In this document: one piece after another, positions 12,575 through 28,275 of the stretch
Numbering within the stretch: the first letter of the stretch is position 1
Layout of the letters: each line of letters begins with the position of its first letter
IMG/VR virus record: IMGVR_UViG_3300029286_000009
Coordinates: 1 to 64,000 of that record
Length of the DNA stretch: 64,000 bases
Strand: one strand, 5' to 3'
Translations under genes and position numbers: made by a program
Notes under the pieces: generated by a model
Told to the model about the DNA's origin: nothing
The model's input: only the letters and a program-made list of their open reading frames with translations
Databases searched by the model: none

Positions 12575-15500
12575 ATGGCTATTAACATCCAAGCAGAGTA
12601 TAATCTACTAAATGAATGTAAGTATATAAAGAATAAGGATAGATGCGTTCATGATACTAACCATGGATTTGAGGCTTTGTTTGGTAAAGGTAATTGTGGG
12701 TTCACCAATAACACCAATATGGACTGGTTGTGTCCATCTGGGTTATTTCTATGGGGGATAGCCTCCGCCGAAAGTTGCTACATTTCATTAGCTGACCCAC
12801 TGTCCGCAACTTTTGAAGCAGACTATTTTGGCGATTTTGAAATCGATATGCTGGTTAGGTATGACGAAGATTCTATAATTCTAGCCTCTGAGACACTGGT
12901 TGGGCGACTAGAGTGGCAGACAGAAGTTGATAGCAGCTGGGAAGATGCTGCTTATGTGGAATTAGAAATCACTCCAGATGGAAACTGGCACCGCTATACA
13001 AAAGTAATGTTTGAAAATCCGTATTGGGTAGGTAATATAACTAACTTACGTTTTTACCCGTTTACAAACGGAGTAGCAAGCGTAGAATTTATGATTAAAC
13101 GTCTTGCTTTTAGGTCTGACACCCATTACAAATGTAAATACCCGCCGTGTGCGTTTAATGATAGTTATTCTCACCCTTGTTCAGCTATTGGGAAAGCAGC
13201 TAGAGCATACAGTATAACTCGTGTCAACCAAGCTACTGTGGATGTAGACAATTTTAGGATAGGGGTTAGTCTAGACGATTATAGTATACAATATATTGAT
13301 CTGGACTTAAACCACTGTACTGATAACTACGCGATAGCCCAAGAGTTAACTATTAAAATGAATACACTGTCTTTTGGGGGCTACAAGTTTGCAGAATGCT
13401 ATTATGATGATGTAGCAGAAAACTTCAGTATTTATACTGGTACTAAGGGTAAGAACGGTTCCGTCAATATATATCATGGGGGCGATAAAGACGTTTCAGT
13501 ATCTCTTGGCTTCTTTTCTGATACAGATACACCAACATGGCGTAGTGAATCTGGAATAGATCCAGTTGATGGTTTTATCTCCGCTTATCAAAAAATACCT
13601 GCTACTGTACTTTATCGTTTACCCAATTCAGAATCACCGTTAATAACGTTTGACCCCGCAGAACCCATGGTCTATGCGGGTAGGGCTAACTTGCAGTCGT
13701 TGCCTATGGAGACGACAATCGAAGAAGGCAATGTTCCGGGGAGTCTATTCTTAGATATTTTTGGGCGGGCGAACTACGAAGGTTATATAAATCATGTCCA
13801 GTTCAAAGGAAACATTATTTCTGGACAAAGTAGAATATTCCTACTTCGCCCCATTGCAACCTTGACCTTTTCAATAATGTATATAAGTGATCTGCTCACT
13901 TCTTCTGACCTCGTAAGTGGGCAAGATTCTTTACACCAAATTGATATAAACTGGTACTTACGTCCAGGCGATATTTTTGGTTTGTATATGTGTTTACCTG
14001 CTTTAGACATTGATGACAATTCTAAAGTAAGACCAGATATGCAGTATAAATACTCGTGGATTGACCTGCGTGATACAAGTTTAGCCGTTGGAGATTCACT
14101 TACTTATACTACGGAGAATATTAAGTTCTATGGCTTTCAGGGACTACCGGTGTATGGCTACTCAGATACCTTAATTCCTGGGTATGGTATAGAAGCTGAA
14201 CTACGCTACGAGTATGGCGTTAGTCATGTAGCAATGGTGGGCACAGAGTCTAATTGTAAAGTAGACATGGATTTAATGACTTTGGATATAACAAAGGTAA
14301 GAGTGTCGAGTAATGTTACTACTGGAGACTTGCAGGATGCTCCATCTGCAGATTTATTGACTGTTTTCAGTGAAGAAGATGACCCCGATAATTGGTGGAT
14401 AGAATTTTGGTTTCCCACCTATGTGAAGTCAGTATATAAAATTGTAACTACATTTGAAGACTCAGAAAATATTCGTGGGTTTGATTGGGAGTACTATTTA
14501 AATGAAAATGACCGGGGCACTTTATCCTGGACTGAGGAATTTAAATACCCTACAGAAGCTGTGGGGGTTGGAAGTGCAGTAGGTTGGCTAAGACTCGGTC
14601 TTCCTCTCTACGTGTATTTAGATGGTTCTACTGACATGACCCAACACCCCTACATAGGACAAAATTACGTTACGGATGACCCCTATGATTATTACCCCGG
14701 AGTCACAGATCAACAAAGAATTACGCGCTTTACCAAAGCGTATGGTGTTCGTTGGAACAAACTCGAACAGATTTTTTATCCGGTTGATACCCACGGTCTA
14801 CGCTTGTACGTGTGGCGGTGGGCCAGTGCCCGTATAACCTCGGTGCAAATCTGGGCACAGCTAACATCTACAGAAACTATCCTGCACGCAATAGAAGGTT
14901 GGGGAGCAAGCGGTCCGCTAGTATTTGATACAGAACGATATAATGTTGTAGATAGAACAGGCGAACTATGGCAGTCTAGTCGTATAAGCCGTGCCAAAAC
15001 ATCGGATTATACATATGGGCTAGATTTTGACTTTCAAGACAATGATGATATGACGACTGTGGTGGCAGAAGTTGGTACTACGATGAGTCATCTAGAAATA
15101 GATTTAGTAAGTCTACCTGTGCAGATACAACAGATTAAACTTATACCACAGCACATAGCAGTGCAATTGCGAGAGGCGGATAGTAAAGAACCTATTACTG
15201 AAATATCAAACCTTTCGTGGGGGTCCCCCTCTGACGGCTCAGATTACACTTATGGCCCAGCACAACCCTATACTGTGTATAATGACACAGGATTTAGAGC
15301 TGCACTTATATTAAACATTGCAGACCCCCTAGCTGTTGACCAATCCTGTGTGTTTTATAGCACCTTAGCCTCGAGTGGTTCTTTAAGTGATCCCGCCCGT
15401 GGAACATACGCAGATATAATACGATCTCCTGATACCTACATTACTAACGACAAAGGAATTAATTACCATGCTCGTGTTTATACCCCAATAGAGGTGACTC

Positions 15501-18500
15501 CTACTGCATGGCACAGTTCTACTAATAGTGGGATTACATGGCAGACATTGACTTCGGGTAATCCGTTCACAGAAACAGTTATGTGGAATGAGCCTATCAA
15601 TCCTTACAATACTGATTGGAAGGTATATAATTGGGCTAAATCAGACTCAGTTACGATAAGTGGCGGGCTTCTTAGTATAACAACTATACCCAGGTATTAT
15701 ACAGTAGAATCTGGGGCATGGTTGGCTCCCACATACTTCCAAGATGTGGCACGTAGTGATACATTCTTACTAGAGACTCAAATTTTAGGGGGTATGACTC
15801 AACAGCCCGGTACAGACGTTTCAGCTGGTATTGTTATATTTGATAAGGAAGATAATACAAAGTCTTTCCGCATAGAACGTTATACGGGTAATAATTTGTC
15901 TACTGTATCTGGGGGGTTTAATGAAGACAATGCACACTTAAATTATGCTTTTGGTGACTACGTTCGTTGGGGACCGCAAGTTAATTTTGCAGGAGTAAGT
16001 GGGTGTAGTCCGGATTGCTTGACTACTAGTCGTTATGAATATAGCTTACTACTTAAATTGATACAGAATGGTAACGCAGTAGATGTATTTTACCGCTTAC
16101 CTTATGAAGGTTGGACTACCGTGAGTTCTTATTCTATAGTAGATTGGTCAAAAAACATTCGGATAGGTGTTTATGGGAATACACAGGCAGTATCGAAGGT
16201 AATAAATAATATTAAAGTACCCGCAACTTTTGACTATCTCTCCTATAAAGATAGTACCCCCCGCAGAGTTGAGGACTTTAACCAAGATTGTAATTTTTCG
16301 GAGCTAACTACCACTTGGAGTGGTTGGACGGCTTACAATACCGAACATACGTCTCTGTTTTGTACCTCAGCAGATGCAGAAGGTAGTTTAAAAATTCGTA
16401 AATGGGTCAATGATTCTGATTTCAAGTATTTTGATCACTATCTCCAATCTCCAGCCCTGCTAACTACGTGGGGTTCTATTACAGACTACGATGATGTTTT
16501 ATTTAGGTTGACGGGGTATGATGACCGATTAATGGTATCAGGTAGTTATTCAGCAGGGTTACTTTTGAGAGATTCCAGTGACTACAATAACAGTATAAAA
16601 TATGCTTACTGTGGTGCGAATAGGTTGGAAATCAGGGAAAATGGTGGTAATAAAAACTACTTAACAATTGATCCAGTCACTTCTACATCCGGGCTTTGGC
16701 TTAAACTTGATAAAGCATGCGGGGTAGTTGTATTAGGGTACTCCTACGACGGCTCTAATTTTGAGGTTGCCTCGGGGATTAGTCTGTGGGATTGGTCTGA
16801 GGAAGCTGAAGTTGAACTAGCAGTAGCAACTGATGTAGGAGACATTACATTTGATTACTTTCAATTTGGGCGATCTAGGTTAGACGCCACTAACATGGCT
16901 GCTTCATTTAATCCTAAGCTACCTTTGTTGAACATATATGGAACTGGGTTTGATTGGGGCACTCTCTATTATAGCACTGCATCTGGGCTAGAGAATTTTA
17001 CAACTACTAAACCCCCAGCAGTGTCCCACGTGATGTTTTTAAAAGACCAGGAAAACGATGTAGACTTTGACGCAGTAAAGTTTATTCCTGATGTAAGAGC
17101 AGCAAAGTCAGAGCATTTTTCCTTGAATATGTTCGAAATACCCCAGGCAAACCAGCAACTATTTGATTACACTGGCTCCCTTATGCTTGTTGACCCAGTC
17201 TTGACCGAATCGGGCAGTGGTTGGTCCGAGAATCTTTCCTATAAAGGAATTCCGCTATATGATTCCCCGGTGTTACTACTAGACCTACGAGAGGTGTACA
17301 ACCTTGGACGTTGCCCGTTAGCTACTAACCTCGCAACAGGTAGGTTTTCTGCCACAGATACAAACTATCCAATAGACGCAACATGGGGAGACCAGTCGTA
17401 TGAGCAAGTTGGTTTTGGTGTACAGTGCAAGTATAGCTCTAGTAACCAATGTACCTTAGACCCCTCCGCCGGGAAACCACGCATGATATATGCTGAAGAT
17501 GAGCTTCCTAAATACTATTTTCCCAACACCTGTAATGGGGTTTCAGGTACCGCTGGCGATGTGCGAAAAGTGTGTGAGTATTTTACTCCTGGATCGGCAA
17601 GGTGGGTTATGCTGGAGAGTAAAGACTTCTTATCCACGACAGCATCAGCAACAGCGATGTGGTTTCTAGGACCAACCGAAGTTAATCACATACAGAGACC
17701 AGTAGCACTCACACATGACTACAACTGGTGGTCAACTGCTTATGGTAAGACAGCATGGACTAGTGGCACCAGCGACAACTCAGATGACGCTCTTGTTTAT
17801 TTGTACCCAGGTTCTGGTATTGCGGGCACCTGTGGGTTTAATCCTACTGGAAATCCTTACTGGCGGTTCTCTACTGATCGTAATTGGACATGGGAAGACC
17901 AGTTCAGTATAGACATAAAAATGACTAACCCGGAGAATATTGATAAAATGCAGATAAAGTTGGGACGAGACCCCTACTGCTACTGGTTATTTACAGTCAC
18001 TGGCACATTGTCCACGACTTGGCAAACGCATGTCTTCCATTATAAAGAAGCAGAACGCATAATAGCCAAAGATACCGGTTTATCAGAACCAGTATACACG
18101 ACTGCTGATGCAGAATTTTACGAGGTGGATGACGCCCCATACTCACCTATGCCCTATCTAAACCATGGTTATATAGAAATGACTGTTTCGGGTTCAGATG
18201 GGACGGATGTATACATCCGTGGCTTAAAGAATGTTAGAACTAGGTTTAAAGATGGATGGATGTTTTTAGGTGTAGATGAGTCACTATATATACCTGATAT
18301 TGATTTGGTGAATACCGGGACAATTAGCTTCAACTACAAGCCCTCAGAAGCAGCGGTAAAGTTGGTAGAAGCTGACCACCGTGAATTTATGTTTGATATA
18401 CTAAACATTAGCAACTCAGAAGCAAGTATAAGTCTTGTCTTAAACCCCCAGTATGGGTGGGAGGTATTTTGTTGGGGAATACAGGAGCAACAAATTCTTG

Positions 18501-19051
18501 ATTATATACCAACTGTAAAAGAGTCCGAGTCAATACTCCCTTCGTCTTCAAATCCTGGACCTTTCGAGATAGTCCTCAGCTGGGCACCTGACCATATACC
18601 GGGACTAACTGACTCTATTGTATTATGGGTAAATGGGATTAAAGTTTGTGCTGGAGACTTCGCTTCGTTAGGCAGCTCATTCAAGACAGACGATATTAAA
18701 ATAACTTTGGGGAGGGGAGCCTCAATCATACATGACGAGGATAAAACATTGCATGCCGCCTATGCTTGGTTCTCTGACCTGAAGATATTCAAATACGCAG
18801 TTAATAAGCCTACTACTAACGTAGAGGATGCTTCTCTTATACCAGAAAATATGCTTGAGTTATCAGAGGATGGAATAGCATGGAAGTCTTTTGCTAATGG
18901 AGAACTCCCCATTCGTGTGTCTGGTGTAGAGAATAGGGAAGGTGTAACATTCTACATGCGAAATAAACGTCCCAAGAAGGATGTTAAGTTACTGCAAAAA
19001 AGAGGACAGGCGTCACTAATAGTAATGTGGGAAGTTAGCCAATCATGGTAA
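12575..19051 (+). CDS. Large (2158 aa) putative tail/baseplate protein with carbohydrate-binding and ConA/LamG-like domains
   Basis: CBM-like motif PDGNWHRY...W.GNITNLRFYP; two ConA-like units (SAGIVIFD...LKL...W...ATFDY and SAGLLL...LWLKL...TFDYF); C-terminal LamG-like GTISF...LWVNG...ITLG...FSDLKIF. Confidence 0.6.
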   Translation: MAINIQAEYNLLNECKYIKNKDRCVHDTNHGFEALFGKGNCGFTNNTNMDWLCPSGLFLWGIASAESCYISLADPLSATFEADYFGDFEIDMLVRYDEDSIILASETLVGRLEWQTEVDSSWEDAAYVELEITPDGNWHRYTKVMFENPYWVGNITNLRFYPFTNGVASVEFMIKRLAFRSDTHYKCKYPPCAFNDSYSHPCSAIGKAARAYSITRVNQATVDVDNFRIGVSLDDYSIQYIDLDLNHCTDNYAIAQELTIKMNTLSFGGYKFAECYYDDVAENFSIYTGTKGKNGSVNIYHGGDKDVSVSLGFFSDTDTPTWRSESGIDPVDGFISAYQKIPATVLYRLPNSESPLITFDPAEPMVYAGRANLQSLPMETTIEEGNVPGSLFLDIFGRANYEGYINHVQFKGNIISGQSRIFLLRPIATLTFSIMYISDLLTSSDLVSGQDSLHQIDINWYLRPGDIFGLYMCLPALDIDDNSKVRPDMQYKYSWIDLRDTSLAVGDSLTYTTENIKFYGFQGLPVYGYSDTLIPGYGIEAELRYEYGVSHVAMVGTESNCKVDMDLMTLDITKVRVSSNVTTGDLQDAPSADLLTVFSEEDDPDNWWIEFWFPTYVKSVYKIVTTFEDSENIRGFDWEYYLNENDRGTLSWTEEFKYPTEAVGVGSAVGWLRLGLPLYVYLDGSTDMTQHPYIGQNYVTDDPYDYYPGVTDQQRITRFTKAYGVRWNKLEQIFYPVDTHGLRLYVWRWASARITSVQIWAQLTSTETILHAIEGWGASGPLVFDTERYNVVDRTGELWQSSRISRAKTSDYTYGLDFDFQDNDDMTTVVAEVGTTMSHLEIDLVSLPVQIQQIKLIPQHIAVQLREADSKEPITEISNLSWGSPSDGSDYTYGPAQPYTVYNDTGFRAALILNIADPLAVDQSCVFYSTLASSGSLSDPARGTYADIIRSPDTYITNDKGINYHARVYTPIEVTPTAWHSSTNSGITWQTLTSGNPFTETVMWNEPINPYNTDWKVYNWAKSDSVTISGGLLSITTIPRYYTVESGAWLAPTYFQDVARSDTFLLETQILGGMTQQPGTDVSAGIVIFDKEDNTKSFRIERYTGNNLSTVSGGFNEDNAHLNYAFGDYVRWGPQVNFAGVSGCSPDCLTTSRYEYSLLLKLIQNGNAVDVFYRLPYEGWTTVSSYSIVDWSKNIRIGVYGNTQAVSKVINNIKVPATFDYLSYKDSTPRRVEDFNQDCNFSELTTTWSGWTAYNTEHTSLFCTSADAEGSLKIRKWVNDSDFKYFDHYLQSPALLTTWGSITDYDDVLFRLTGYDDRLMVSGSYSAGLLLRDSSDYNNSIKYAYCGANRLEIRENGGNKNYLTIDPVTSTSGLWLKLDKACGVVVLGYSYDGSNFEVASGISLWDWSEEAEVELAVATDVGDITFDYFQFGRSRLDATNMAASFNPKLPLLNIYGTGFDWGTLYYSTASGLENFTTTKPPAVSHVMFLKDQENDVDFDAVKFIPDVRAAKSEHFSLNMFEIPQANQQLFDYTGSLMLVDPVLTESGSGWSENLSYKGIPLYDSPVLLLDLREVYNLGRCPLATNLATGRFSATDTNYPIDATWGDQSYEQVGFGVQCKYSSSNQCTLDPSAGKPRMIYAEDELPKYYFPNTCNGVSGTAGDVRKVCEYFTPGSARWVMLESKDFLSTTASATAMWFLGPTEVNHIQRPVALTHDYNWWSTAYGKTAWTSGTSDNSDDALVYLYPGSGIAGTCGFNPTGNPYWRFSTDRNWTWEDQFSIDIKMTNPENIDKMQIKLGRDPYCYWLFTVTGTLSTTWQTHVFHYKEAERIIAKDTGLSEPVYTTADAEFYEVDDAPYSPMPYLNHGYIEMTVSGSDGTDVYIRGLKNVRTRFKDGWMFLGVDESLYIPDIDLVNTGTISFNYKPSEAAVKLVEADHREFMFDILNISNSEASISLVLNPQYGWEVFCWGIQEQQILDYIPTVKESESILPSSSNPGPFEIVLSWAPDHIPGLTDSIVLWVNGIKVCAGDFASLGSSFKTDDIKITLGRGASIIHDEDKTLHAAYAWFSDLKIFKYAVNKPTTNVEDASLIPENMLELSEDGIAWKSFANGELPIRVSGVENREGVTFYMRNKRPKKDVKLLQKRGQASLIVMWEVSQSW

Positions 19052-21045
19052 TTATTGTAACTGATGCTGGTTTAGAAGTGGACGGCATCTTACTTAGCAA
19101 TACTGCAGAAATACAGACATTTATTGATGTGCACACACCACAAGACTTGAATATAAATATAAGTCCGATTCCGCCTAGTGACCTAACTGCTCACATAGGG
19201 GCTCATTTACCTTTTGACTTTCCTATCGAGTTAATAGCATCATCGTATCATCCTATGTCAGACCTCTACACCTATATAAGCGTGCACGTGCCTGCTGACT
19301 TCACAACACTGGTAGGGGCACACTTACCACACAATCTGAATATTCCTATTGGTGCCCATAGTCCTCGTGATATAACGTTCGGGATGGTGGCAGTACCTTA
19401 CGTAGAGCTGGATATTATTATAGATTGGATTGTTCACCAATCCGATATTAACACCGTAGTTGGTTCTCACATACCCTATGATTTGGGGGCGTATTTTAAT
19501 GTATGGAACATATCCAATATACAGGTAAGGATAGGTACGTCTATACCAAAAGATTTGTGCTTTATTCTCAGAGCTTTCGGGCAGGGTAACAGCGATCTTA
19601 CTGTTAGAACCGCTGCAACACACACTAGTTGCCTGGATTTTAGTTATATCATGTACGTGTGGGGGGCTAAAGATTTTCAAATCACTATTGGAACAAGTAT
19701 AAAACACGATTTGTCATTGCTCATGCAAACTTGGCATATTAGAGATGTTAACGTTTGTATTGATACTGTGTTTCCTAAAACCTTAGAGATGAGTATTACC
19801 CCGATCCCAGAAGAAGGATATGACCTAAATGTGATACATCGCATACATCAAAAGGTGGCTCTTTTTGCCGAGTTTAATATTTGGGAAGGTATCTCTACTC
19901 TGAGTGCTACTTTATTGGGATTGTACCCTTACGACCTTAGTGTTGGGTTTACAATGGGTAGTTACTCACCACTGTATATTACACTGCCCATGACCACTGG
20001 GTATAAAGACTTGGTTGTTACTCTTAAATCTGCTACCCGCATTATGTCTACTATTATAACTGTATACACGATGGAGATTAAAGACTTATATGTTTCTATA
20101 AATCAAGGTTGGCCTTGTGGGTTTGGCTCGTCGTATATGCTGCTTGAGGTTGTATTAAACCCAAAATTCTTCTTGAATTTCACTGCTCTTATACGGGCTA
20201 TTGATGGTAGTGGCAGTGCAGTTATAGCAAATTATGTCAACAAACCTTATTTTGATACATTTATAGCGATACAAAAAATACAGATTAGTTTGCCGGAAGA
20301 CCAGAGCACACCAGAAGCAATTATTGTAGACAAGACTGACCTTACATACGAAAATCAATTCTATCAAACTGCACAAGATGTTGTCAGAGTAAGATTTCCC
20401 TGGCCACGTTTCCGTCGTATACCTTCTTATATAGAGTTTTCTGTCATTCTGACTCCATTTCATGGGAATACCTATGCTGATATTATGGTGTACATTCATG
20501 CTGTACGACCAGAGTCGCCTAGGATGCCTACATCACGACCTTTAATTTTGAGAGAGGGCATGGGAGCATCTGATCCAATATGGCCTGATATATTCCAGGT
20601 TAAAGAAATCGAATTGTGGTCAGACGATATGAAAGACTTGGTTAGAAAAATAGATATTACTTTTGGTGAACAAATACGAGAGTATTACTGGGTTTCAAGT
20701 GAGCAACGTGCCTATAGTAAAAATATGTGGGAAACTAAATGGACCATTTTAGGCAGAGGTTATTTACCTCATACAGAGTATAGTGGACAAATAGATTATG
20801 TTACTATGAGAGAAATAAGTGATATGAAAAAATACAACACAATAGACGAAGCTATACGGGCTCTCATTAGTAACTTTTTATATTCCGGTAAGTCTGACAT
20901 ACAAATTCTTATTGGCACCATGGGTTATTATTCTGAGCTATCTGTAATGGTAGATATTCGGGGGCGTGATCGCTTTACCAACCTTCGTGTGTATATTGAA
21001 CCAATGCGAGCATGCGACCTAACAATAACATTGCAATGCCAGTAA
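19045..21045 (+). CDS. Putative fibre-like structural protein with ~12-residue beta repeats
   Basis: N-terminal half is built of D-L-x-x-x-I-x-x-H-x-P-x repeats, e.g. DLTAHIGAHLPF, DFTTLVGAHLPH, NLNIPIGAHSPR, DINTVVGSHIPY. Confidence 0.55.
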   Translation: MVIIVTDAGLEVDGILLSNTAEIQTFIDVHTPQDLNINISPIPPSDLTAHIGAHLPFDFPIELIASSYHPMSDLYTYISVHVPADFTTLVGAHLPHNLNIPIGAHSPRDITFGMVAVPYVELDIIIDWIVHQSDINTVVGSHIPYDLGAYFNVWNISNIQVRIGTSIPKDLCFILRAFGQGNSDLTVRTAATHTSCLDFSYIMYVWGAKDFQITIGTSIKHDLSLLMQTWHIRDVNVCIDTVFPKTLEMSITPIPEEGYDLNVIHRIHQKVALFAEFNIWEGISTLSATLLGLYPYDLSVGFTMGSYSPLYITLPMTTGYKDLVVTLKSATRIMSTIITVYTMEIKDLYVSINQGWPCGFGSSYMLLEVVLNPKFFLNFTALIRAIDGSGSAVIANYVNKPYFDTFIAIQKIQISLPEDQSTPEAIIVDKTDLTYENQFYQTAQDVVRVRFPWPRFRRIPSYIEFSVILTPFHGNTYADIMVYIHAVRPESPRMPTSRPLILREGMGASDPIWPDIFQVKEIELWSDDMKDLVRKIDITFGEQIREYYWVSSEQRAYSKNMWETKWTILGRGYLPHTEYSGQIDYVTMREISDMKKYNTIDEAIRALISNFLYSGKSDIQILIGTMGYYSELSVMVDIRGRDRFTNLRVYIEPMRACDLTITLQCQ

Positions 21046-21046
21046 A

Positions 21047-21125
21047 ACTATTATTTTCGGGGGTACAATTTTCTCCGGTACACTATTATTCTCGCGGATT
21101 ACACTCCACTGAGTGTACACTATTA
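21047..21125 (+). repeat. Degenerate ~36-bp tandem repeats (iteron-like) with an internal hairpin
   Basis: Units start with ACTATTA at 21047, 21082 and 21119 (actattattttcgggggtacaattttctccggtac / actattattctcgcggattacactccactgagtgtac). Hairpin TACACTC-cact-GAGTGTA at 21100-21117. Confidence 0.55.
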
Positions 21126-21161
21126 ATATATCTCTTTTCCTTTTTCAACAAAACTAATATT

Positions 21162-21173
21162 ATTATAGTACCC
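21162..21173 (-). promoter_or_regulatory. Leftward copy of the GGGTAC-TATAAT motif with no downstream minus-strand gene
   Basis: attatagtaccc on + reads GGGTACTATAAT on -. Confidence 0.5.
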
Positions 21174-21276
21174 AAAAGTGCCTCAGAGTAGAAAAATTTT
21201 GTCTAGAACAGGCTCTAAACATAATAAGATATTATTTTTACTATAAATAAAAACTTTATGACTCTCGAGCATTTCG

Positions 21277-21288
21277 GGGTACTATAAT
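21277..21288 (+). promoter_or_regulatory. Putative phage promoter GGGTAC-TATAAT for the replication operon
   Basis: Consensus -10 box TATAAT preceded by GGGTAC, 37 nt before the dnaN ATG. The motif recurs in other intergenic gaps. Confidence 0.6.
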
Positions 21289-21325
21289 TATTATGTAAGG
21301 GAACAGAGAACTAAATGGAGGAATA

Positions 21326-22498
21326 ATGCGTGTAAAGGTTCCTACAAGTGACTTCCTACGAATGCTCACCAAATTGAAGCCGATGCGGGCTGTGTCGACC
21401 ACCGGATTTACTTTTGCAGTTTACACATTTGATGCCTATGAGGACAAATTTAGGGTTGTAGTTAGTGATAACGCTGGTGTAACAGCAACGACCGAGATAT
21501 TTGCAAAGGTAGTGACCCCTGGACGAGTTAGTGTGAATGGTACAGATTTTTTTCAGTTACTCGCGAAGATAACTCCAGCCACTTCGCAGGGTTCGGGGTC
21601 TGAGGTAATTGAATTGTACGTCGATGGTACCAAGCTTATATTGTTAACGGACAGTAAATATGGAGCTAATAAAAAGAATGTTCATCAAAGGCGCAATTTT
21701 TCGTTAGTAAAGACTGATCTTTATTTCAATCCTGACTTTCCTGTATCGCCCAATGGATTAGATGTAGTTCTGCCGGGCAGTTATCTATCAGATATATTTA
21801 GAATTTTATCTAGGTTAATTTCTAACTATACATCGGATATCGCAGGACTCTCTGGTATTTTGTTGCGGTGCGAGGACCAAAGAATTCATTTTGTTGTATC
21901 GGACGGTTTTAGGATTGTAGAAATAAATTATCCAGGGCGACTTCAAGTGAACAATTTTGACTTAATTATTCCTAAGATGAGCTGTAATATGTTGCAGTCC
22001 CTGATAGATGATGGAGACGAGGTTAGTCTTAGGGCAGATAACTATAAAGCGTTGTTCACAATAGAGAACAATGGATTAACTACAACATTAACTACCCCGT
22101 TAATTAAAGCCAATTTTCCGCCATATCATATGATATTTGATACACCTGGATTAAGCTATATCTTAGATACAAAAATCCTCTTAGACAACGTGTCGAATGT
22201 TAGACGGGCAATAGATGATGATACTTACAGATTAAGATTGTCATTTGAAAATACTGGTTTATCAGTGTCTAATTACCAGGCGGGTCACGCTGACTTTGTC
22301 AATCAAGGAATACCCTTGACTCAGTTTGAAGCACCGGCAACCCTTTTGATTAATGGTTTTCTTCTGGAAAACTCTCTCTCGTTGTTGGGTGCTGAAATGA
22401 TAAAGTTGGTAGTTCCACCCGAAGACAGACCAATCATAATTGATAATCTGGATAGTAAACTTCACGTGAGAATAGCTGTTGCACTATCCAACGAATAA
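21326..22498 (+). CDS. dnaN: DNA polymerase III beta subunit (sliding clamp)
   Basis: 390 aa. VVSDGFRI resembles VATDGHRL, LIKANFPPY resembles LIDGRFPDY, LSGILL resembles LNGVLL; GGAGG RBS. Confidence 0.8.
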   Translation: MRVKVPTSDFLRMLTKLKPMRAVSTTGFTFAVYTFDAYEDKFRVVVSDNAGVTATTEIFAKVVTPGRVSVNGTDFFQLLAKITPATSQGSGSEVIELYVDGTKLILLTDSKYGANKKNVHQRRNFSLVKTDLYFNPDFPVSPNGLDVVLPGSYLSDIFRILSRLISNYTSDIAGLSGILLRCEDQRIHFVVSDGFRIVEINYPGRLQVNNFDLIIPKMSCNMLQSLIDDGDEVSLRADNYKALFTIENNGLTTTLTTPLIKANFPPYHMIFDTPGLSYILDTKILLDNVSNVRRAIDDDTYRLRLSFENTGLSVSNYQAGHADFVNQGIPLTQFEAPATLLINGFLLENSLSLLGAEMIKLVVPPEDRPIIIDNLDSKLHVRIAVALSNE

Positions 22499-23201: not shown

Positions 23202-24416
23202 TTGGCAGCCAGAAAGGATAAAAAAAATGAAGAGGAAGCTAAGCTTACTAAAGGTACGAAAGGGACTGAATTTAAAAAAGAAAAAAAGGAGATAGATCCG
23301 CTAAAGGCATTTCAGATGACGTCGGCGGCGGTAGAGACCAAGTTCGCTGAGACTGCTTATCATGCGTGGCTACATGACGCTGAGAAGATGAAACAGTACC
23401 GTTTCAGTAGTGGGTCAATTAGTGTAGATACAGCCTTAGGGGGCGAGGGTTTACCGTACGGGAGAATAATCGAAGTTTGGGGACCTTCTCAAAGTGGCAA
23501 AACAAGTTGGGCGTTGGAGACCGCATGGCACTTACAACGGCGTAGACGAGAAGAAGGAAAGGGCTACGGTGTTGTATTTATGGATATCGAACATAAATTT
23601 GACCGCAGGCTACTCTACCAGTGGCGGGGTGGTTTTCTTCCAGAAGCAACCAAGTTTGAGGAACCATTTACAGGTGACGCCGCCTTTGGTATGTTACTAC
23701 ACTATGTAGAAAGTATGGGTACGTGTATGGTAATTGTGGATAGTGTGAGTGCTATACGTTCTTCTGAAATGCTAGACAAAGATGACCAGAAGACCAATTT
23801 CGGGGCACCTGCAAAACTTATTGGGGATTGGTTGCCAAAGATTTCTACTGCAGCAACGATGACTGGGGTTCCTATTATGTTTGTTAACCAGGTCAGAGCA
23901 AAATTAGACGCGGGCCCCAAAGCGATGGGGCGAGCCAAACTGCGTAAATATGGGGGCATGGCTTATGACCACTGGGTTTGTGTTAGCTTATACTTGGGTA
24001 AATCCACTGTGATAAATGACGGTCTGCGGGACTTGGGGCATATGGCGAAGATGGTAATATACAAAAATCATAGTGGACCCACTATGTTCAAGGAATTTAA
24101 GTTGAAATTAGACTATGGGAGACAGTTTGATACAACATATGAGTTAGTAGACCGTGCTACTCAGTTAAGTATAATTTCTGGTGGGGCAGGCGGGCACTAC
24201 AAAATAGGGGATGTTGCTATTCACGGTAAGGACAATTTGTATGCTGAGGTTCGTGGTAACCTTGGGCTTCAGTCTTACTTATGGGATGAAATAATGAAGA
24301 TGCAAGTGCACCAACCACTCCCAGAAACAGACCTTTCTACTACATCGTGGGCAATTGAAGATGAAGGAGTAGAAATTACTTTGGACGACCACGAAGAAGG
24401 TTTATTGGAAGAATAA
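23202..24416 (+). CDS. recA: RecA/UvsX-family recombinase
   Basis: SSGSISVDTALGGEGLPYGRIIEVWGPSQSGKT (Walker A), FMDIEH, VIVDSVSA (Walker B), FVNQVR; TTG start. Confidence 0.93.
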   Translation: MAARKDKKNEEEAKLTKGTKGTEFKKEKKEIDPLKAFQMTSAAVETKFAETAYHAWLHDAEKMKQYRFSSGSISVDTALGGEGLPYGRIIEVWGPSQSGKTSWALETAWHLQRRRREEGKGYGVVFMDIEHKFDRRLLYQWRGGFLPEATKFEEPFTGDAAFGMLLHYVESMGTCMVIVDSVSAIRSSEMLDKDDQKTNFGAPAKLIGDWLPKISTAATMTGVPIMFVNQVRAKLDAGPKAMGRAKLRKYGGMAYDHWVCVSLYLGKSTVINDGLRDLGHMAKMVIYKNHSGPTMFKEFKLKLDYGRQFDTTYELVDRATQLSIISGGAGGHYKIGDVAIHGKDNLYAEVRGNLGLQSYLWDEIMKMQVHQPLPETDLSTTSWAIEDEGVEITLDDHEEGLLEE

Positions 24417-24430
24417 TTAAGGAGAATTTA

Positions 24431-25000
24431 GTGGAAAAGGAATTAGTTGAATACAAAGAATTTGACTTTATGGGAGATAACTTAATCGCGGTTGAATACC
24501 AAGGACAATGGTATGTTTCTCCGCGACGTATATGCGATAATATAGGGATATCTTGGAGTTCTCAACTACAGAAACTACAGGCACATCCAGACAAATTCGG
24601 TTGTGCAAGGGTTAAGATGCCCGGAAAAGATGGTAAAAAGCATAGTATGTTAGGTATCCCAGAAAAGAACATTGAACAATTTGTGAAAACAGTCAACCCG
24701 AACAGGGTAGGTAATAAAAAAAATGTAGTATATTTCATTCAGATAAAAAATGGCCCAATAAAGATTGGATTGACAGGTAATGTAAAAAATAGACTTAAAT
24801 CATTATCGTGTTCTTTGCCTTATGATTTAGAATTGTTACACGTAATGCCTGGGGATGAGAAATTAGAAAAGAAACTCCATAAGAAATTTTGTAAATATCA
24901 TATACGAGGAGAATGGTTCGAATGCCACGATGGTATATTGAATTACCTAAAAAAATTACAGTCCAAGAACTCTCAAGTGGCAAAGAACATAGAGCTATGA
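24431..25000 (+). CDS. P22 antirepressor-N-like domain fused to a T5orf172/GIY-YIG-like domain
   Basis: N-terminal YVSPRRICDNIGISWSSQLQKL; C-terminal VYFIQ...IKIG.T...RL..L...E..LH..F...IRGEWF. Confidence 0.75.
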   Translation: MEKELVEYKEFDFMGDNLIAVEYQGQWYVSPRRICDNIGISWSSQLQKLQAHPDKFGCARVKMPGKDGKKHSMLGIPEKNIEQFVKTVNPNRVGNKKNVVYFIQIKNGPIKIGLTGNVKNRLKSLSCSLPYDLELLHVMPGDEKLEKKLHKKFCKYHIRGEWFECHDGILNYLKKLQSKNSQVAKNIEL

Positions 25001-25341: not shown

Positions 25342-25800
25342 TTGTCTAAAGAAAAAACAAAATGGTTTGTGGAGGAGTTATTAAAAGGTTATCCAGACCC
25401 GGAAGATTTAGTTGCCCGTGGATTTAGTGATGAATTTATACTGGGCATTTCCTTTATACAAGATGAATTATTGAGTATGACAATGCTGGCTTTGTCTCGC
25501 TTTCTCTGCCATATTCAGTTCTTTGGGAACCAGACGAAAGCGGGAGTAATAAATTTACGTCGAAAATTGGAAGGCACAAAATACCAAACAATTTCTTCAC
25601 TTAAAGATATAACCGATCGAAGTACTAGTGCACAAATGACTGCTAAGGCTTACGCGTCTAATCCTGATTTATACACGATGGAAAAAGAATTAGCATTGCT
25701 TGAAGAGCGTGCAGAATATTATAATTACATGCCAGAAAGAATCCAAGAGTATATACAGGTGCTTAAATACGAGATGAGGCGTAGAGAAGCGAGAAAATAA
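25342..25800 (+). CDS. Hypothetical helical protein (possible UvsY-like recombination mediator)
   Basis: 152-aa alpha-helical ORF between recA and dnaB; the UvsY idea rests on size and position only. Confidence 0.45.
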   Translation: MSKEKTKWFVEELLKGYPDPEDLVARGFSDEFILGISFIQDELLSMTMLALSRFLCHIQFFGNQTKAGVINLRRKLEGTKYQTISSLKDITDRSTSAQMTAKAYASNPDLYTMEKELALLEERAEYYNYMPERIQEYIQVLKYEMRRREARK

Positions 25801-27266
25801 TGACAGAAATAGAAAAGACTTTTGAGCATTTACATACTGAGCGGGCGATATTGGCGTGCATATTTAAGAAACCAGATCTTTTAATTGATCTGGATGGCGT
25901 AGTAGCAGTTGATGCGTTTAAGTCACCTGTAAACCGATCGGTTATGCAAGCAACTTTGGACTTATACGAACTCGGTTATTCAAAGTTAGATGCAGAGATG
26001 GTTTACAACAAGTTGTTGCTGAGCCCAGTCGCGGGGCTAGACACAGAGCAGCTTAGAATGTATCTGAACTCTCTTTACAGCGCAGAAGTATATATTGATA
26101 ACTTTAAAACCTTAGTATCGGACCTAGCTGATGTGGATGTAAAAGAACGTGTAAGGCAACTCCTGCATAGTAGTTTAGATGATCTTTATAGGACTAAGGA
26201 GCGGATATCGGCGGGGGAATTTATTGTAGATTTACAGAATAATTTGTTTACTCTTGAGGGAAAATTTAACGCAAAGAATGATGAGCCGCGTGATGTGTGT
26301 TCGGGCATCAGAGACCGGATGGTTGACCGTGTAAATCATCCCAATGACTACAGTGGCATCCCTAGTGGTATGCAGATACTTGATGACATCACAATGGGGT
26401 GGCTTAAAACCAAGTTCTATTTTGTGGCGGCACGTCCCAAAACTGGTAAGTCCTCGTTACTATCCCAGTGGGCATATCATGCTGCTTTTTTTGCCCCTCT
26501 CAGGCATTATCGGGTACTATATTTAGATACAGAGATAAAGCCCGACGAGTTTGAGTGCAGGATGGTGGGACACATTAGTGCAGTAGACCATATGCGTTTA
26601 ATGCAGGGGGATTGGTATCAAAACCAGCAAGCTTCCGAGAATATCATAACTACACTTAATTTTCTAGAGAAAAATCAGGGTATTTTATACCATAAATATA
26701 TACCCAATTTTAAGATTGCCAGTATAGTTAGTCTAATAAAAAAATATGTTTATAACCATGGTATAGATATAGTTTTTTTTGATTATATAAAGGAACCAGA
26801 TGAAGCAGGTGATAGAGCACGTTGGCAGAAAATTGGAGACCTAGCACGGGCATTAAAAAATATGGGTGGCGAACTTGATATACCTGTTTTGAGTGCTCTT
26901 CAGCAAAACCGAAAAGGAGAAGGACAAAGTAGAACTGGTGGAGAAGCATATGGGGAATCTGATGATGTATTAAAAGAATGTGACGCCGCATTTATGCTTA
27001 ACTGGAAGAGCCACAAGGAAATGCGAGATGAGACACTACGGGCTGGTACGCATCGATTTCAAATTGAGCGGGCCCGTTATGTAAAGAGCTTTTATAACGG
27101 AATAAACTTCCGGTTCTACGGGTATTGTTTGCGGTTTGTTCCGTCACCAATCCAGAATTTAGTTGACGCAATGACTATGCCAGCAGATCATAGAGAGGAA
27201 AATGTCTATTCAGCTATACCACAACTCACGGAGGAAAAAGTCGAAACCCTTGTCCTCCCAAATTGA
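25800..27266 (+). CDS. dnaB: DnaB-like replicative helicase
   Basis: ERAILAC N-terminal domain, GIPSGMQILD, VAARPKTGKS (Walker A), VLYLDTE, IVFFDYI, ELDIPVLSALQQNR. Confidence 0.92.
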   Translation: MTEIEKTFEHLHTERAILACIFKKPDLLIDLDGVVAVDAFKSPVNRSVMQATLDLYELGYSKLDAEMVYNKLLLSPVAGLDTEQLRMYLNSLYSAEVYIDNFKTLVSDLADVDVKERVRQLLHSSLDDLYRTKERISAGEFIVDLQNNLFTLEGKFNAKNDEPRDVCSGIRDRMVDRVNHPNDYSGIPSGMQILDDITMGWLKTKFYFVAARPKTGKSSLLSQWAYHAAFFAPLRHYRVLYLDTEIKPDEFECRMVGHISAVDHMRLMQGDWYQNQQASENIITTLNFLEKNQGILYHKYIPNFKIASIVSLIKKYVYNHGIDIVFFDYIKEPDEAGDRARWQKIGDLARALKNMGGELDIPVLSALQQNRKGEGQSRTGGEAYGESDDVLKECDAAFMLNWKSHKEMRDETLRAGTHRFQIERARYVKSFYNGINFRFYGYCLRFVPSPIQNLVDAMTMPADHREENVYSAIPQLTEEKVETLVLPN

Positions 27267-28275
27267 CCGTTCAAAGGTAGAGTATGTTAAGGAGATCGCA
27301 GACCCCGAGCTAGTGGCTTCTAGCTTGGGTGTTCATTTTTATGGGCACAGAGGAAGGTATTTGCGTGCAGCATGCCCGGTACATAACGGGGATAATAAAA
27401 CAGCTTTTAGTCTAGATATACAGACTGGGGCGTGGGCTTGTTTCACAGAAGGTTGTCATCATGGCTATAGTGATATAATTGGGCTAGTAGAATTGGTACG
27501 TCGGTGCAATTTTATTGAAGCAATTAAGTATATCGCCGCGTTGTCAGGTATTAATCTGGATAATTCTACATCAGACGATGTGGCGGGGGCTTTGTATCGT
27601 AAGGATGTGCGTGATTTTGTTAATAGAACAAATAAAGTTCATTCTGGGACCGATTTGGGTACTATAATTAATATAGAGGAACAAATTCATGGATGGGTTA
27701 CTTGCCGGTCCGACTATTTTACAAGGAGGGGTTACACACCAAGCATACTAGACTATTTTGAGATTGGATCATCCTATGATGCAAGAAGAACACCGCGTGA
27801 GATCATACCCATACGTGATATGAATGGTCGGGTGGTAGCTTTAGATGGTAGGCGTACGGACTCCGATGAAAATCCCCGCTATTTAATAAATCCACCGGGA
27901 TTTGCAAAGGGGGGAGTTCTATATCATTACCATAAGGCTAAAGATTACATAGCCGTTTTCCAAGGGAAGATTTTTGTGGTGGAAGGGTACAAGGCTTGTT
28001 GGTCAATGGTGCAAGCAGGTTACTTGAACACAGTAGCATGTATGGGAGCTGGATTTCATGGGCAGCAAGCAGGAGTTCTGTTACAGAACATGTCCTTACA
28101 GAAAGTGATAGTAGTTTTGGACGGAGATATTGCAGGTAGAAATGGAGCTAGAAGAACTAAAAGTGAACTTAATCATCTTTGTGAAATATCAATGGTAGAT
28201 ATGCCAGAGGGGGAAGACCCCAGTACACTACCACCAAATGTTTTACATTCACTACTATATCCGCATATTAACTAA
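27202..28275 (+). CDS. dnaG: DnaG-type DNA primase (CHC2 zinc finger plus Toprim)
   Basis: CPVH...CF..GC zinc finger, IIPIRD..GRVV...GR, VVEGY, LDGDIAG, EDP. The exact start is uncertain because of the overlap with dnaB. Confidence 0.9.
   Translation: MSIQLYHNSRRKKSKPLSSQIDRSKVEYVKEIADPELVASSLGVHFYGHRGRYLRAACPVHNGDNKTAFSLDIQTGAWACFTEGCHHGYSDIIGLVELVRRCNFIEAIKYIAALSGINLDNSTSDDVAGALYRKDVRDFVNRTNKVHSGTDLGTIINIEEQIHGWVTCRSDYFTRRGYTPSILDYFEIGSSYDARRTPREIIPIRDMNGRVVALDGRRTDSDENPRYLINPPGFAKGGVLYHYHKAKDYIAVFQGKIFVVEGYKACWSMVQAGYLNTVACMGAGFHGQQAGVLLQNMSLQKVIVVLDGDIAGRNGARRTKSELNHLCEISMVDMPEGEDPSTLPPNVLHSLLYPHIN

What the first reader, a model, noticed from the sequence alone, without database searches (positions are those of the whole stretch)
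21046..21325. Structured intergenic region: iteron-like repeats plus back-to-back promoters, a candidate transcription-primed origin
Seen: the 280-bp gap between structural genes and dnaN holds ~36-bp degenerate tandem repeats (ACTATTA at 21047/21082/21119, GTACACTATTA twice), a 7-bp hairpin, and a 31-bp inverted repeat (24/31) whose core is GGGTACTATAAT on each strand around an AT-rich spacer. The leftward copy has no gene to transcribe and points into the repeats and the 3' end of the structural operon. Known: T4-type origins are primed by promoter-driven R-loops. Inference: the leftward promoter makes an origin primer RNA or an antisense RNA against late genes.
Basis: partly seen in the sequence, partly recalled or inferred. 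Interest (0 to 1): 0.65.

Follow-up and report, generated by a model that had tools for sequence, protein, structure and literature searches.

The report
Back-to-back phage promoters with duplicated leader
The gap before the sliding-clamp gene of this uncultivated 260-kb freshwater phage holds two outward-facing copies of a phage-specific promoter, and the leftward, gene-less one is a second copy of a promoter-plus-leader cassette that heads another operon 190 kb away; an origin of replication is possible but not supported here.

Summary
The gap is 280 bp, with short degenerate repeats, a 7-bp hairpin and an inverted repeat built on GGGTACTATAAT.

The inverted repeat is two members of a 13-site promoter-like class in the 259.7-kb genome. 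Twelve sites point the same way as their genes. Ten have a ribosome-binding site and start codon 16-44 nt downstream.

The rightward site (P2) serves dnaN. The leftward site (P1) has no ORF. P1 plus the "iterons" (21043-21196) is a paralogue of a cassette at genome position 211662-211853, 100% identical over 115 nt and inverted. That copy is the promoter and 192-nt leader of an operon encoding a 157-aa protein, GroES and HU.

A relative with 62% dnaN identity has the same two-locus layout. More distant relatives (44-46%) carry the dnaN-side cassette turned round, followed by dnaN's own promoter. One 545-kb relative has three copies.

All leaders share a purine tract and a hairpin, with some compensatory changes.

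GC skew shows no inflection at 21 kb. The paralogous copies sit at strand-switch skew minima. No RNA data exist.

Best reading: a bidirectional promoter region with a duplicated regulatory promoter-leader cassette that makes a non-coding RNA. A transcription-primed origin remains a minority possibility.

The parts
19045..21045 (+). 666-aa ORF of unknown function, last gene before the gap. It converges with the leftward promoter P1.
   Evidence: ORF list. No Pfam or PHROG hit. Relatives keep the order 2155-aa ORF, ~650-aa ORF, gap, dnaN.
21043..21196 (-). Promoter-leader cassette, copy 1: P1 plus about 110 nt of non-coding leader. Paralogue of genome 211662-211853 (L001:6662-6853).
   Evidence: BLAST against the whole genome: 21068-21182 is 100% identical, 21043-21089 matches 46 of 47, in inverted orientation. 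Copy 2 is about 36-38 nt longer (one extra unit). The repeat unitig has twice the flanking depth in metagenome contigs.
21162..21173 (-). P1 core GGGTACTATAAT (leftward). The expected transcript start is near 21155.
   Evidence: Exact match. PWM score 41.2. No ORF of 40 aa or more with a ribosome-binding site within 400 nt downstream. A leftward GTACTATAC core sits at the same place in L002.
21179..21186 (-). Upstream box CTGAGGCA of P1.
   Evidence: Alignment of the 13 sites gives the consensus ctgaggca-N5-GGGTACTATA.
21131..21146 (-). Purine tract of the leader (GAAAAAGGAAAAGAGA in the RNA sense), about +10 to +25 from the predicted start.
   Evidence: A comparable A/G-rich tract lies at the same distance in L002, L261, the three G001 copies, L004 and L008.
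21100..21117 (.). 7-bp hairpin TACACTC-cact-GAGTGTA.
   Evidence: Sequence and folds. Relatives carry other, stronger hairpins at this place in the leader (z = -3.7).
21047..21125 (.). In the leader sense they read as AATAATAGTGTAC... units with GGAGAA-type boxes.
   Evidence: No TRF array. The units do not score as promoters. The number of units differs between the two copies.
21197..21263 (.). A+T-rich spacer between the two promoters.
   Evidence: 21214-21253 is 90% A+T. The spacer of the copy-2 divergent pair is the most A+T-rich 100-bp window of the genome. The distance between -10 elements is 108 bp here and 103 bp at copy 2.
21264..21288 (+). P2, the dnaN promoter: upstream box CTCGAGCA plus GGGTACTATAAT (21277-21288).
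   Evidence: PWM score 40.0. A ribosome-binding site and ATG lie 37 nt after the -10. A promoter of the same class directly precedes dnaN in L002, L003, L004 and L008.
21326..22498 (+). dnaN (sliding clamp), first gene of the replication block: RecA/UvsX 23202-24416, DnaB 25800-27266, DnaG 27202-28275.
   Evidence: PHROG 947 at 2e-21 and Pfam PF02767.

Best explanation
The gap is a bidirectional promoter region.

Both GGGTACTATAAT copies are members of a phage-specific promoter class: an upstream CTGAGGCA box, five bases, GGGTAC fused to a TATAAT-like -10. The class has 13 members in the genome, mostly ahead of replication and accessory genes. P2 (rightward) drives dnaN and the replication genes.

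P1 (leftward) and the "iteron" stretch together form one unit, a promoter-plus-leader cassette. Its other copy is the promoter and 192-nt 5' leader of an operon encoding a 157-aa protein, GroES and HU, 190 kb away.

The leader carries a purine tract, a hairpin and repeated GGAGAA-type boxes. I read it as a cis-regulatory module on which a phage or host factor acts, on the RNA or on the DNA, to control this subclass of promoter. At the dnaN locus the cassette has no ORF. It therefore gives a non-coding RNA that runs toward, and possibly antisense into, the 3' end of the 666-aa gene.

Shown: the motif class, the duplication, the missing ORF, and conservation of the two-locus layout.

Inferred: promoter activity, the existence and length of the transcript, and factor binding.
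For: - Motif class: 13 sites score 33-54 and the next best scores 8. Twelve are co-oriented with their genes, and ten have a ribosome-binding site and start 16-44 nt downstream.
- Only the sites at 21171(-) and 211689(+) depart from that pattern, and they share one leader, 100% identical over 115 nt.
- At copy 2 the leader runs straight into a 157-aa ORF with a ribosome-binding site, followed by GroES and HU.
- The 62% relative has a leftward promoter plus a homologous leader at the dnaN locus (L002). A contig from the same sample (L261) carries a second copy, about 75% alike by my own reading of the two sequences (no tool computed it), just before the 159-aa homologue. Both fold with z = -3.7, more stably in the leader sense, and a C-G pair is swapped for G-C.
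- The 545-kb relative G001 has three copies, one before the homologue of the 157-aa ORF.
- The G001-type leaders share a hairpin with 2 compensatory pairs among 10, in 5 sequences.
- In G001-type phages the dnaN-side cassette points toward dnaN, yet is still followed by dnaN's own promoter.
- The leader has no plausible small ORF and no Rfam family match.
Against: - No RNA data exist for this phage, only DNA metagenomes. Neither promoter is shown to fire.
- The leader RNA of this genome is no more stable than shuffled sequence (z = -0.5 and +0.5).
- No regulator has been identified.
- GGAGAA-type boxes occur as direct repeats here and as inverted repeats in L002 and L261. That suits DNA-binding sites, including origin iterons, as well as it suits RNA.
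- Only about eight leaders were available, so the covariation evidence is thin.
- No phage RNA polymerase or sigma factor was found that would explain the unusual promoter.
Confidence: 0.55

Rival explanations
1. Transcription-activated or R-loop-primed origin of replication, the reader's idea extended: each cassette copy is an origin. Divergent transcription unwinds the A+T-rich spacer, or the purine-rich start of the P1 transcript stays hybridised to its pyrimidine template and primes DNA synthesis.
For: - The cassette works independently of a downstream gene and of its orientation.
- dnaN keeps its own promoter even where P1 points at it.
- A purine tract close to the predicted transcript start is the most conserved leader feature. 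By general knowledge, purine-rich RNA on a pyrimidine template gives stable hybrids.
- Both copies in this genome adjoin extreme A+T-rich spacers, one of them the richest 100 bp of the genome.
- Copy 2 and its G001 equivalent sit at strand-switch points that are cumulative GC-skew minima. In G001 it is the global minimum, at about 385 kb.
- The locus abuts the dnaN, recA, dnaB and dnaG genes.
- T4 also has several origins built on promoters (general knowledge).
Against: - Skew shows no inflection at 21 kb here or at 220 kb in G001, only a change of slope.
- At four-fold degenerate sites the 666-aa gene (+0.13 +/- 0.11) resembles dnaN (+0.17). The low values belong to the two giant genes.
- Skew minima at copy 2 and copy C are also where genes diverge, which alone produces a minimum.
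- The repeats are not regular iterons.
- No DnaA-box cluster was found in the gap, and no initiator gene was recognised.
- One clade of relatives has only about 10 bp between the two genes (L006).
- A+T-rich DNA upstream is common at other promoters of the class.
Confidence: 0.2
2. Neutral by-product of recombination between regulatory cassettes. An inversion or gene conversion left a promoter-leader copy facing the end of the late operon. It may fire, but its transcript has no function.
For: - The two copies are 100% identical over 115 nt while the flanks are unrelated, as after recent conversion.
- The phage encodes a RecA/UvsX recombinase.
- Cassette orientation differs between clades.
- One clade lacks the gap altogether.
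- Promoter-stem-loop cassettes are known recombination points in T4-type phages (PMC2839356, PMC4122927).
Against: - The leftward orientation, the exact promoter core and a homologous leader persist in a phage whose DnaN is only 62% identical.
- In that phage the two copies have diverged (by eye, about a quarter of positions differ) yet keep a strong hairpin with a compensatory pair. That argues for selection on both copies.
Confidence: 0.12
3. 3'-end element of the late operon, with a trans-antisense side effect. The hairpins and T-rich run after the stop codon terminate or stabilise the late mRNA. Any read-through RNA is complementary over about 150 nt to the leader of the operon encoding the 157-aa protein, GroES and HU, and would silence that operon late in infection.
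For: - On the plus strand two hairpins follow the stop. One of them (21057-21078) uses three G-U pairs, so it cannot form on the other strand. A T-rich run follows.
- In L002 a 9-bp hairpin directly follows the stop codon.
- Complementarity to the copy-2 leader follows from the inverted duplication.
Against: - The scan finds no canonical intrinsic terminator. The T-run begins 13 nt after the hairpin.
- The plus-strand fold is not significant (z = -1.3).
- In L002 and L261 the hairpin is more stable in the leader sense.
- In G001-type phages the cassette is co-oriented with the late genes, so no antisense RNA would arise there.
Confidence: 0.08

Closest known systems
PeSL cassettes (promoter-early stem-loop) of T4-type phages (Arbiol et al. 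2010, PMC2839356; Comeau et al. 2014, PMC4122927)
   Same: Both are small composite regulatory cassettes, a promoter plus a stem-loop, repeated within one large phage genome. Both are nearly identical between copies while the flanks differ, and both are associated with rearrangements between related phages.
   Different: PeSLs have the stem-loop, a working terminator, before a sigma-70-like promoter, and they are abundant in hyperplastic regions. Here the hairpin and repeats lie after the promoter in a 110-190-nt leader. There are only 2-3 copies, at conserved core loci. The promoter has no recognisable -35.
T4 origins oriF (uvsY) and oriG: a middle-mode promoter with a downstream unwinding element and an R-loop primer (general knowledge, not read here)
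   Same: Both have a phage-class promoter whose transcript need not encode anything, A+T-rich DNA beside it, several copies per genome, and a phage with a UvsX/RecA-type recombinase. At copy 2 the same transcript would also be an mRNA, as at uvsY.
   Different: There is no evidence of initiation here and no skew inflection at this locus. No homology exists to T4 sequences or to MotA boxes. The most A+T-rich DNA lies upstream, between the promoters, not downstream.
Lambda oop RNA (general knowledge)
   Same: Both involve a short promoter-driven non-coding transcript lying next to the replication genes and converging on the 3' end of the preceding gene. oop was first proposed as a primer and later shown to be antisense.
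   Different: oop has a defined terminator and is a single copy. Here no terminator was found, and the RNA is a paralogue of an mRNA leader.
Promoter-proximal leader elements that act on the transcribing polymerase (lambda nutL/nutR, HK022 putL/putR; general knowledge)
   Same: Both comprise two or three related elements per genome, each just downstream of a promoter at the head of an operon, made of a linear box plus a hairpin.
   Different: There is no sequence or Rfam similarity. The dnaN-side copy in this genome heads no operon, and no N-like factor is known.

Membership tests
T4-type R-loop origin | A phage-specific (middle-mode) promoter at the site | tested here: met
   P1 belongs to a 13-member promoter-like class. 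This is a motif match only; activity was not tested.
T4-type R-loop origin | A DNA-unwinding element just downstream of the promoter, where the transcript stays hybridised | tested here: inconclusive
   The first ~45 transcribed nt are A+T-rich, with a purine-rich RNA strand. The most A+T-rich DNA is upstream, between the promoters.
T4-type R-loop origin | Replication starts there (marker frequency, skew or coverage) | tested here: not met
   No skew inflection at 21 kb, or at 220 kb in G001. Read-depth profiles could not be made because only contigs are available.
Iteron-type origin (lambda ori, plasmid oriV) | Three or more regular direct repeats of about 17-22 bp | tested here: not met
   The repeat cores are 7-11 nt, spaced 35 and 37 nt apart. 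TRF finds nothing.
Iteron-type origin (lambda ori, plasmid oriV) | An adjacent A+T-rich region | tested here: met
   21214-21253 is 90% A+T.
Iteron-type origin (lambda ori, plasmid oriV) | A cognate initiator gene at or beside the repeats | tested here: inconclusive
   The neighbours are dnaN, an unknown 232-aa ORF, RecA, DnaB and DnaG. No initiator family matched.
PeSL cassette | A stem-loop terminator immediately upstream of a sigma-70-like early promoter | tested here: not met
   The hairpin and repeats lie downstream of P1, in the transcribed leader. There is no -35-like hexamer.
PeSL cassette | Repeated copies that mark rearrangement points between relatives | tested here: met
   Two copies here and three in G001. 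The orientation of the dnaN-side copy differs between clades.
Type III toxin-antitoxin (ToxIN-like) | Near-identical tandem repeats of about 36 nt, followed by a ToxN-family toxin | tested here: not met
   The units share only about 13 nt. The 157-aa ORF has no Pfam, PHROG or PADLOC hit. The G001 homologue has no tandem repeats ahead of it.
Known RNA families (Rfam 15) | A covariance-model match | tested here: not met
   No hit at gathering score in the window, and only chance-level hits at copy 2.
oop-like antisense RNA | A short transcript with its own terminator overlapping the 3' end of the convergent gene | tested here: inconclusive
   The promoter is present and convergent. No terminator-like site was found on the minus strand between 20500 and 21160. 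The transcript length is unknown.

The most novel reading that the evidence does not exclude
The promoter-leader cassette is a free-standing genetic unit that works in either orientation and is kept in 2-3 copies per genome across a clade of uncultivated 260-545-kb freshwater phages. It is either a set of promoter-primed (R-loop) replication origins or a multi-copy small-RNA gene. On this reading the dnaN-side copy is not an orphan but the unit in its pure form.
Probability: 0.25. Interest if true: 0.7.

Novelty: new variant of a known kind. Interest (0 to 1): 0.4.

Why it matters
Nothing is known about how this clade of huge, uncultivated freshwater phages controls transcription or starts replication. 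This locus gives three usable handles:

- A clean 13-site promoter consensus with no ordinary -35. No phage polymerase or sigma factor was detected to explain it.
- A conserved two- or three-copy leader cassette, which marks where to look for a regulator or an origin.
- A concrete test, 5'-end mapping and R-loop mapping at two defined sites.

If the cassette proved to be an origin, it would be a second, unrelated example of T4-style promoter-primed initiation. If it is a regulatory leader, it is an ordinary but useful piece of annotation.

Tried and rejected
- **Close relatives by DNA or protein in the GenBank phage collection:** none.
- **Relatives in IMG/VR and JGI metagenomes:** very few. 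Several contigs carrying dnaN homologues had no retrievable DNA.
- **Pattern scans for the leader boxes in IMG/VR:** only chance-level hits besides G001. A scan for the promoter with its upstream box found nothing.
- **Genomes behind L004 and L008:** not held, so their other copies could not be sought.
- **Rfam:** no family.
- **Type III toxin-antitoxin reading (36-nt repeats plus a small ORF):** rejected.
- **Small ORFs in the gap or leader:** none credible. The 29-aa ORF begins upstream of the predicted transcript start.
- **"Iterons are decoy promoters":** rejected. The units score below 5 with the promoter PWM.
- **Phage RNA polymerase or sigma factor:** none detected for PF00940, PF04542, PF00562 or PF00623. 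The PF00940 control also matched nothing, so that search is uninformative.
- **RNA-seq:** no RNA run holds this phage. Contigs only confirm the two-copy repeat and show no variants.
- **Inversion isomers between the two inverted copies:** untestable, because the contigs break at the repeat.
- **Host from the CRISPR repeat:** the repeat occurs in many phyla, so the host stays unresolved.
- **GTAC clustering:** the gap is one of five GTAC clusters in a genome moderately depleted of GTAC. No conclusion was drawn.

Full report
**Setting.** The window is the first 64 kb of a single 259,732-bp virus record (42% G+C). It comes from a lake-water metagenome and CheckV rates it 96% complete.
- All long ORFs in the window lie on the plus strand.
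- Left of the gap are ORFs of 3198, 2158 and 666 aa with no Pfam or PHROG match. They continue a block that holds a major-head-protein gene at 244.6-245.7 kb. "Structural" is therefore plausible but not shown.
- Right of the gap are dnaN, an unknown 232-aa ORF, a RecA/UvsX-type recombinase, an endonuclease-like ORF, DnaB, DnaG and DnaJ.

The gap is 21046-21325.
- ACTATTA occurs at 21047, 21082 and 21119. GTACACTATTA occurs at 21078 and 21115.
- The hairpin is at 21100-21117.
- The inverted repeat has 42-nt arms, 74% complementary, with GGGTACTATAAT at the core of each.
- The direct repeats are modestly beyond chance: 10 of 1000 shuffles reach the 11-mer. They are not a regular array.

**What the inverted repeat is.** GGGTACTATAAT is the core of a promoter-like motif that recurs across the genome.
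- A weight matrix built from the sites separates 13 places (scores 33-54) from everything else (8 or less).
- The consensus is ctgaggca, five bases, GGGTACTATA(a/t/c)T, usually followed by a TAtaGTAGAGG-like stretch.
- Twelve sites point the same way as the local genes.
- Ten have a ribosome-binding site and start codon 16-44 nt after the -10.
- The class sits ahead of replication and accessory genes at 21-77 kb, 206-214 kb and 246 kb.
- The "31-bp inverted repeat" is therefore two promoters of one class placed back to back, upstream boxes included.
- P2 (21277-21288) is the dnaN promoter.
- There is no ordinary -35. Searches for a T7-type polymerase, multisubunit polymerase domains or a sigma-70 region 2 in this genome found nothing. 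The T7-type control failed, so that result carries no weight.

**What the leftward half is.** BLAST of the gap against the whole genome shows that 21043-21196 is repeated in inverted orientation at 211662-211853. This stretch covers P1 and the whole "iteron" region, up to and including the stop codon of the 666-aa ORF.
- Identity is 100% over 115 nt. Copy 2 carries one extra unit of about 36 nt.
- Metagenome contigs from three studies break at this repeat and show it at double depth, with no sequence variants.
- At the second locus the same promoter points rightward. After a 192-nt leader it reaches a 157-aa ORF with a good ribosome-binding site, then a 290-aa ORF, GroES and an HU-like protein.
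- A divergent promoter of the same class, 103 bp away, drives a DNA methylase.
- Among the 13 sites, only these two depart from the "promoter, short spacer, gene" pattern, and they share one leader.
- The leftward promoter in the window is thus a copy of a promoter-leader cassette that here lacks an ORF.

**Relatives.** DnaN homologues of 42-62% identity come from contigs of up to 545 kb. These keep the order 2155-aa ORF, ~650-aa ORF, a 207-250-bp gap, then dnaN. One clade has only about 10 bp there.
- *Closest relative with DNA (L002, 62%).* It has a leftward GTACTATAC core about 97 bp from a rightward GTACTATAT core before dnaN. Its leader is homologous in its first part and ends in a strong hairpin next to the stop codon.
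- *Second contig from the same sample (L261).* It begins inside a leader that I judge about three-quarters identical to L002's, from reading the two sequences; no tool computed this. It runs into the homologue of the 157-aa ORF. Both leaders fold well (z = -3.7), better in the leader sense than in the antisense. The closing pair is C-G in one and G-C in the other. I assume, but cannot prove, that L002 and L261 are from one genome. If so, the two-locus layout with a gene-less leftward copy is old and maintained.
- *More distant phages (L003/G001, L004, L008; 44-46%).* The dnaN-side cassette points toward dnaN and is still followed, about 125-145 bp on, by a second promoter directly before dnaN.
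- *G001 (545 kb, rated complete).* It also has 13 promoters of its version of the class. Three carry the leader: before dnaN, before a 57-aa ORF, and before the 141-aa homologue of the 157-aa ORF (33% identity).
- *Shared leader features.* All leaders have an A/G-rich tract some 10-35 nt into the transcript, and a hairpin further on. For the G001-type hairpin, RNAalifold finds 10 pairs, 2 with compensatory changes, around a conserved tandem G-A.
- *This genome's own leader.* It is not unusually stable (z = -0.5 and +0.5).

**The origin question.**
- Cumulative GC skew rises steadily through 21 kb. Only the slope changes.
- At four-fold degenerate sites the two giant genes have skew near zero. 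The 666-aa gene (+0.13 +/- 0.11) does not differ from dnaN (+0.17). The step is therefore a property of the giant genes, not of the gap.
- G001 shows the same pattern at its dnaN locus.
- Some origin-like features are real: an extreme A+T-rich spacer between divergent promoters at both copies, a conserved purine tract early in the transcript, independence from gene and orientation, and a position beside the replication genes.
- The paralogous copy lies at a strand switch that is a skew minimum here, and the global minimum in G001. Diverging genes produce such minima by themselves.
- I put the origin reading at about 0.2.

**Other readings.**
- A neutral recombination scar is unlikely, given conservation in the 62% relative.
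- A 3'-end element for the late operon, with read-through RNA antisense to the other operon's leader, is possible in this lineage but cannot be general.
- A type III toxin-antitoxin was considered because of the roughly 36-nt period and the small ORF. It was rejected.

**Comparison with known systems.**
- The nearest described thing is the PeSL cassette of T4-type phages (PMC2839356, PMC4122927). It is a repeated promoter plus stem-loop module tied to rearrangements. Its order of parts, copy number and promoter type all differ from this case.
- Functionally the locus also recalls T4 promoter-primed origins, lambda oop RNA and nut/put leaders. None of these passes a membership test here.

**Verdict.**
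- "Back-to-back promoters, the left one without a gene" is supported.
- "Iteron origin" is not supported at this locus, though not excluded.
- The main new fact is that the left half is a conserved, duplicated promoter-leader cassette.
- Without RNA or replication data, its mechanism remains inferred.

Noticed in passing
window 22311-22343 (inside dnaN): In contigs of two freshwater runs (X4, X5), this 33-nt piece is flanked on both sides by the same 28-nt sequence. That sequence occurs as 61-nt-period CRISPR arrays in many bacterial MAGs. It is therefore a CRISPR spacer against this phage. The repeat is found in Planctomycetota, Chloroflexota, Desulfobacterota and others, so the host stays unresolved.
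   Followed up: partly
window 26512-26523 and 27657-27668: Two full-scoring members of the promoter class lie inside the DnaB and DnaG coding regions, co-oriented with them. They may be internal promoters for downstream genes or shorter products.
   Followed up: no
window 2978-12574 and 12575-19051: Giant ORFs of 3198 and 2158 aa have no Pfam or PHROG match but are conserved in size and order in all relatives. Their four-fold-site GC skew is near zero, while most other plus-strand genes show +0.1 to +0.26.
   Followed up: partly
window 24431-25000: A 189-aa ORF with a P22_AR_N domain plus a T5orf172/MUG113 nuclease-like domain sits between recA and the small ORFs before dnaB. Relatives have no gene of this size there, so it looks like an inserted mobile endonuclease gene.
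   Followed up: no
whole genome (G000): Short palindromes are depleted: GCGC at 0.20, GGCC at 0.36 and GTAC at 0.56 of expectation. This suggests restriction avoidance. The phage also encodes an N6/N4 DNA methylase next to cassette copy 2.
   Followed up: no
L001:4413-5270 (genome 209.4-210.3 kb), L001:8275-8604 and L001:8941-9258: A caspase-family peptidase (Peptidase_C14), a GroES co-chaperonin and an HU-like protein are encoded around cassette copy 2. The caspase-like gene and GroES are also present at this locus in a relative.
   Followed up: no
L260:6084-7849 (genome 246.1-247.8 kb): One promoter of the class (246039) precedes an endonuclease-like ORF, followed by a transposase (PHROG 506, E = 3e-116). 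Both are inserted just after the major-head-protein gene.
   Followed up: no
protein P0014: A 99%-identical copy of the 157-aa protein is recorded on a 320-kb contig. The 259.7-kb record may therefore be incomplete, or a larger near-identical phage may exist.
   Followed up: no
L004:1-30: The 381-kb contig of a relative begins exactly at its dnaN-side P1 promoter. That is what an assembly break at a repeated cassette would look like.
   Followed up: no
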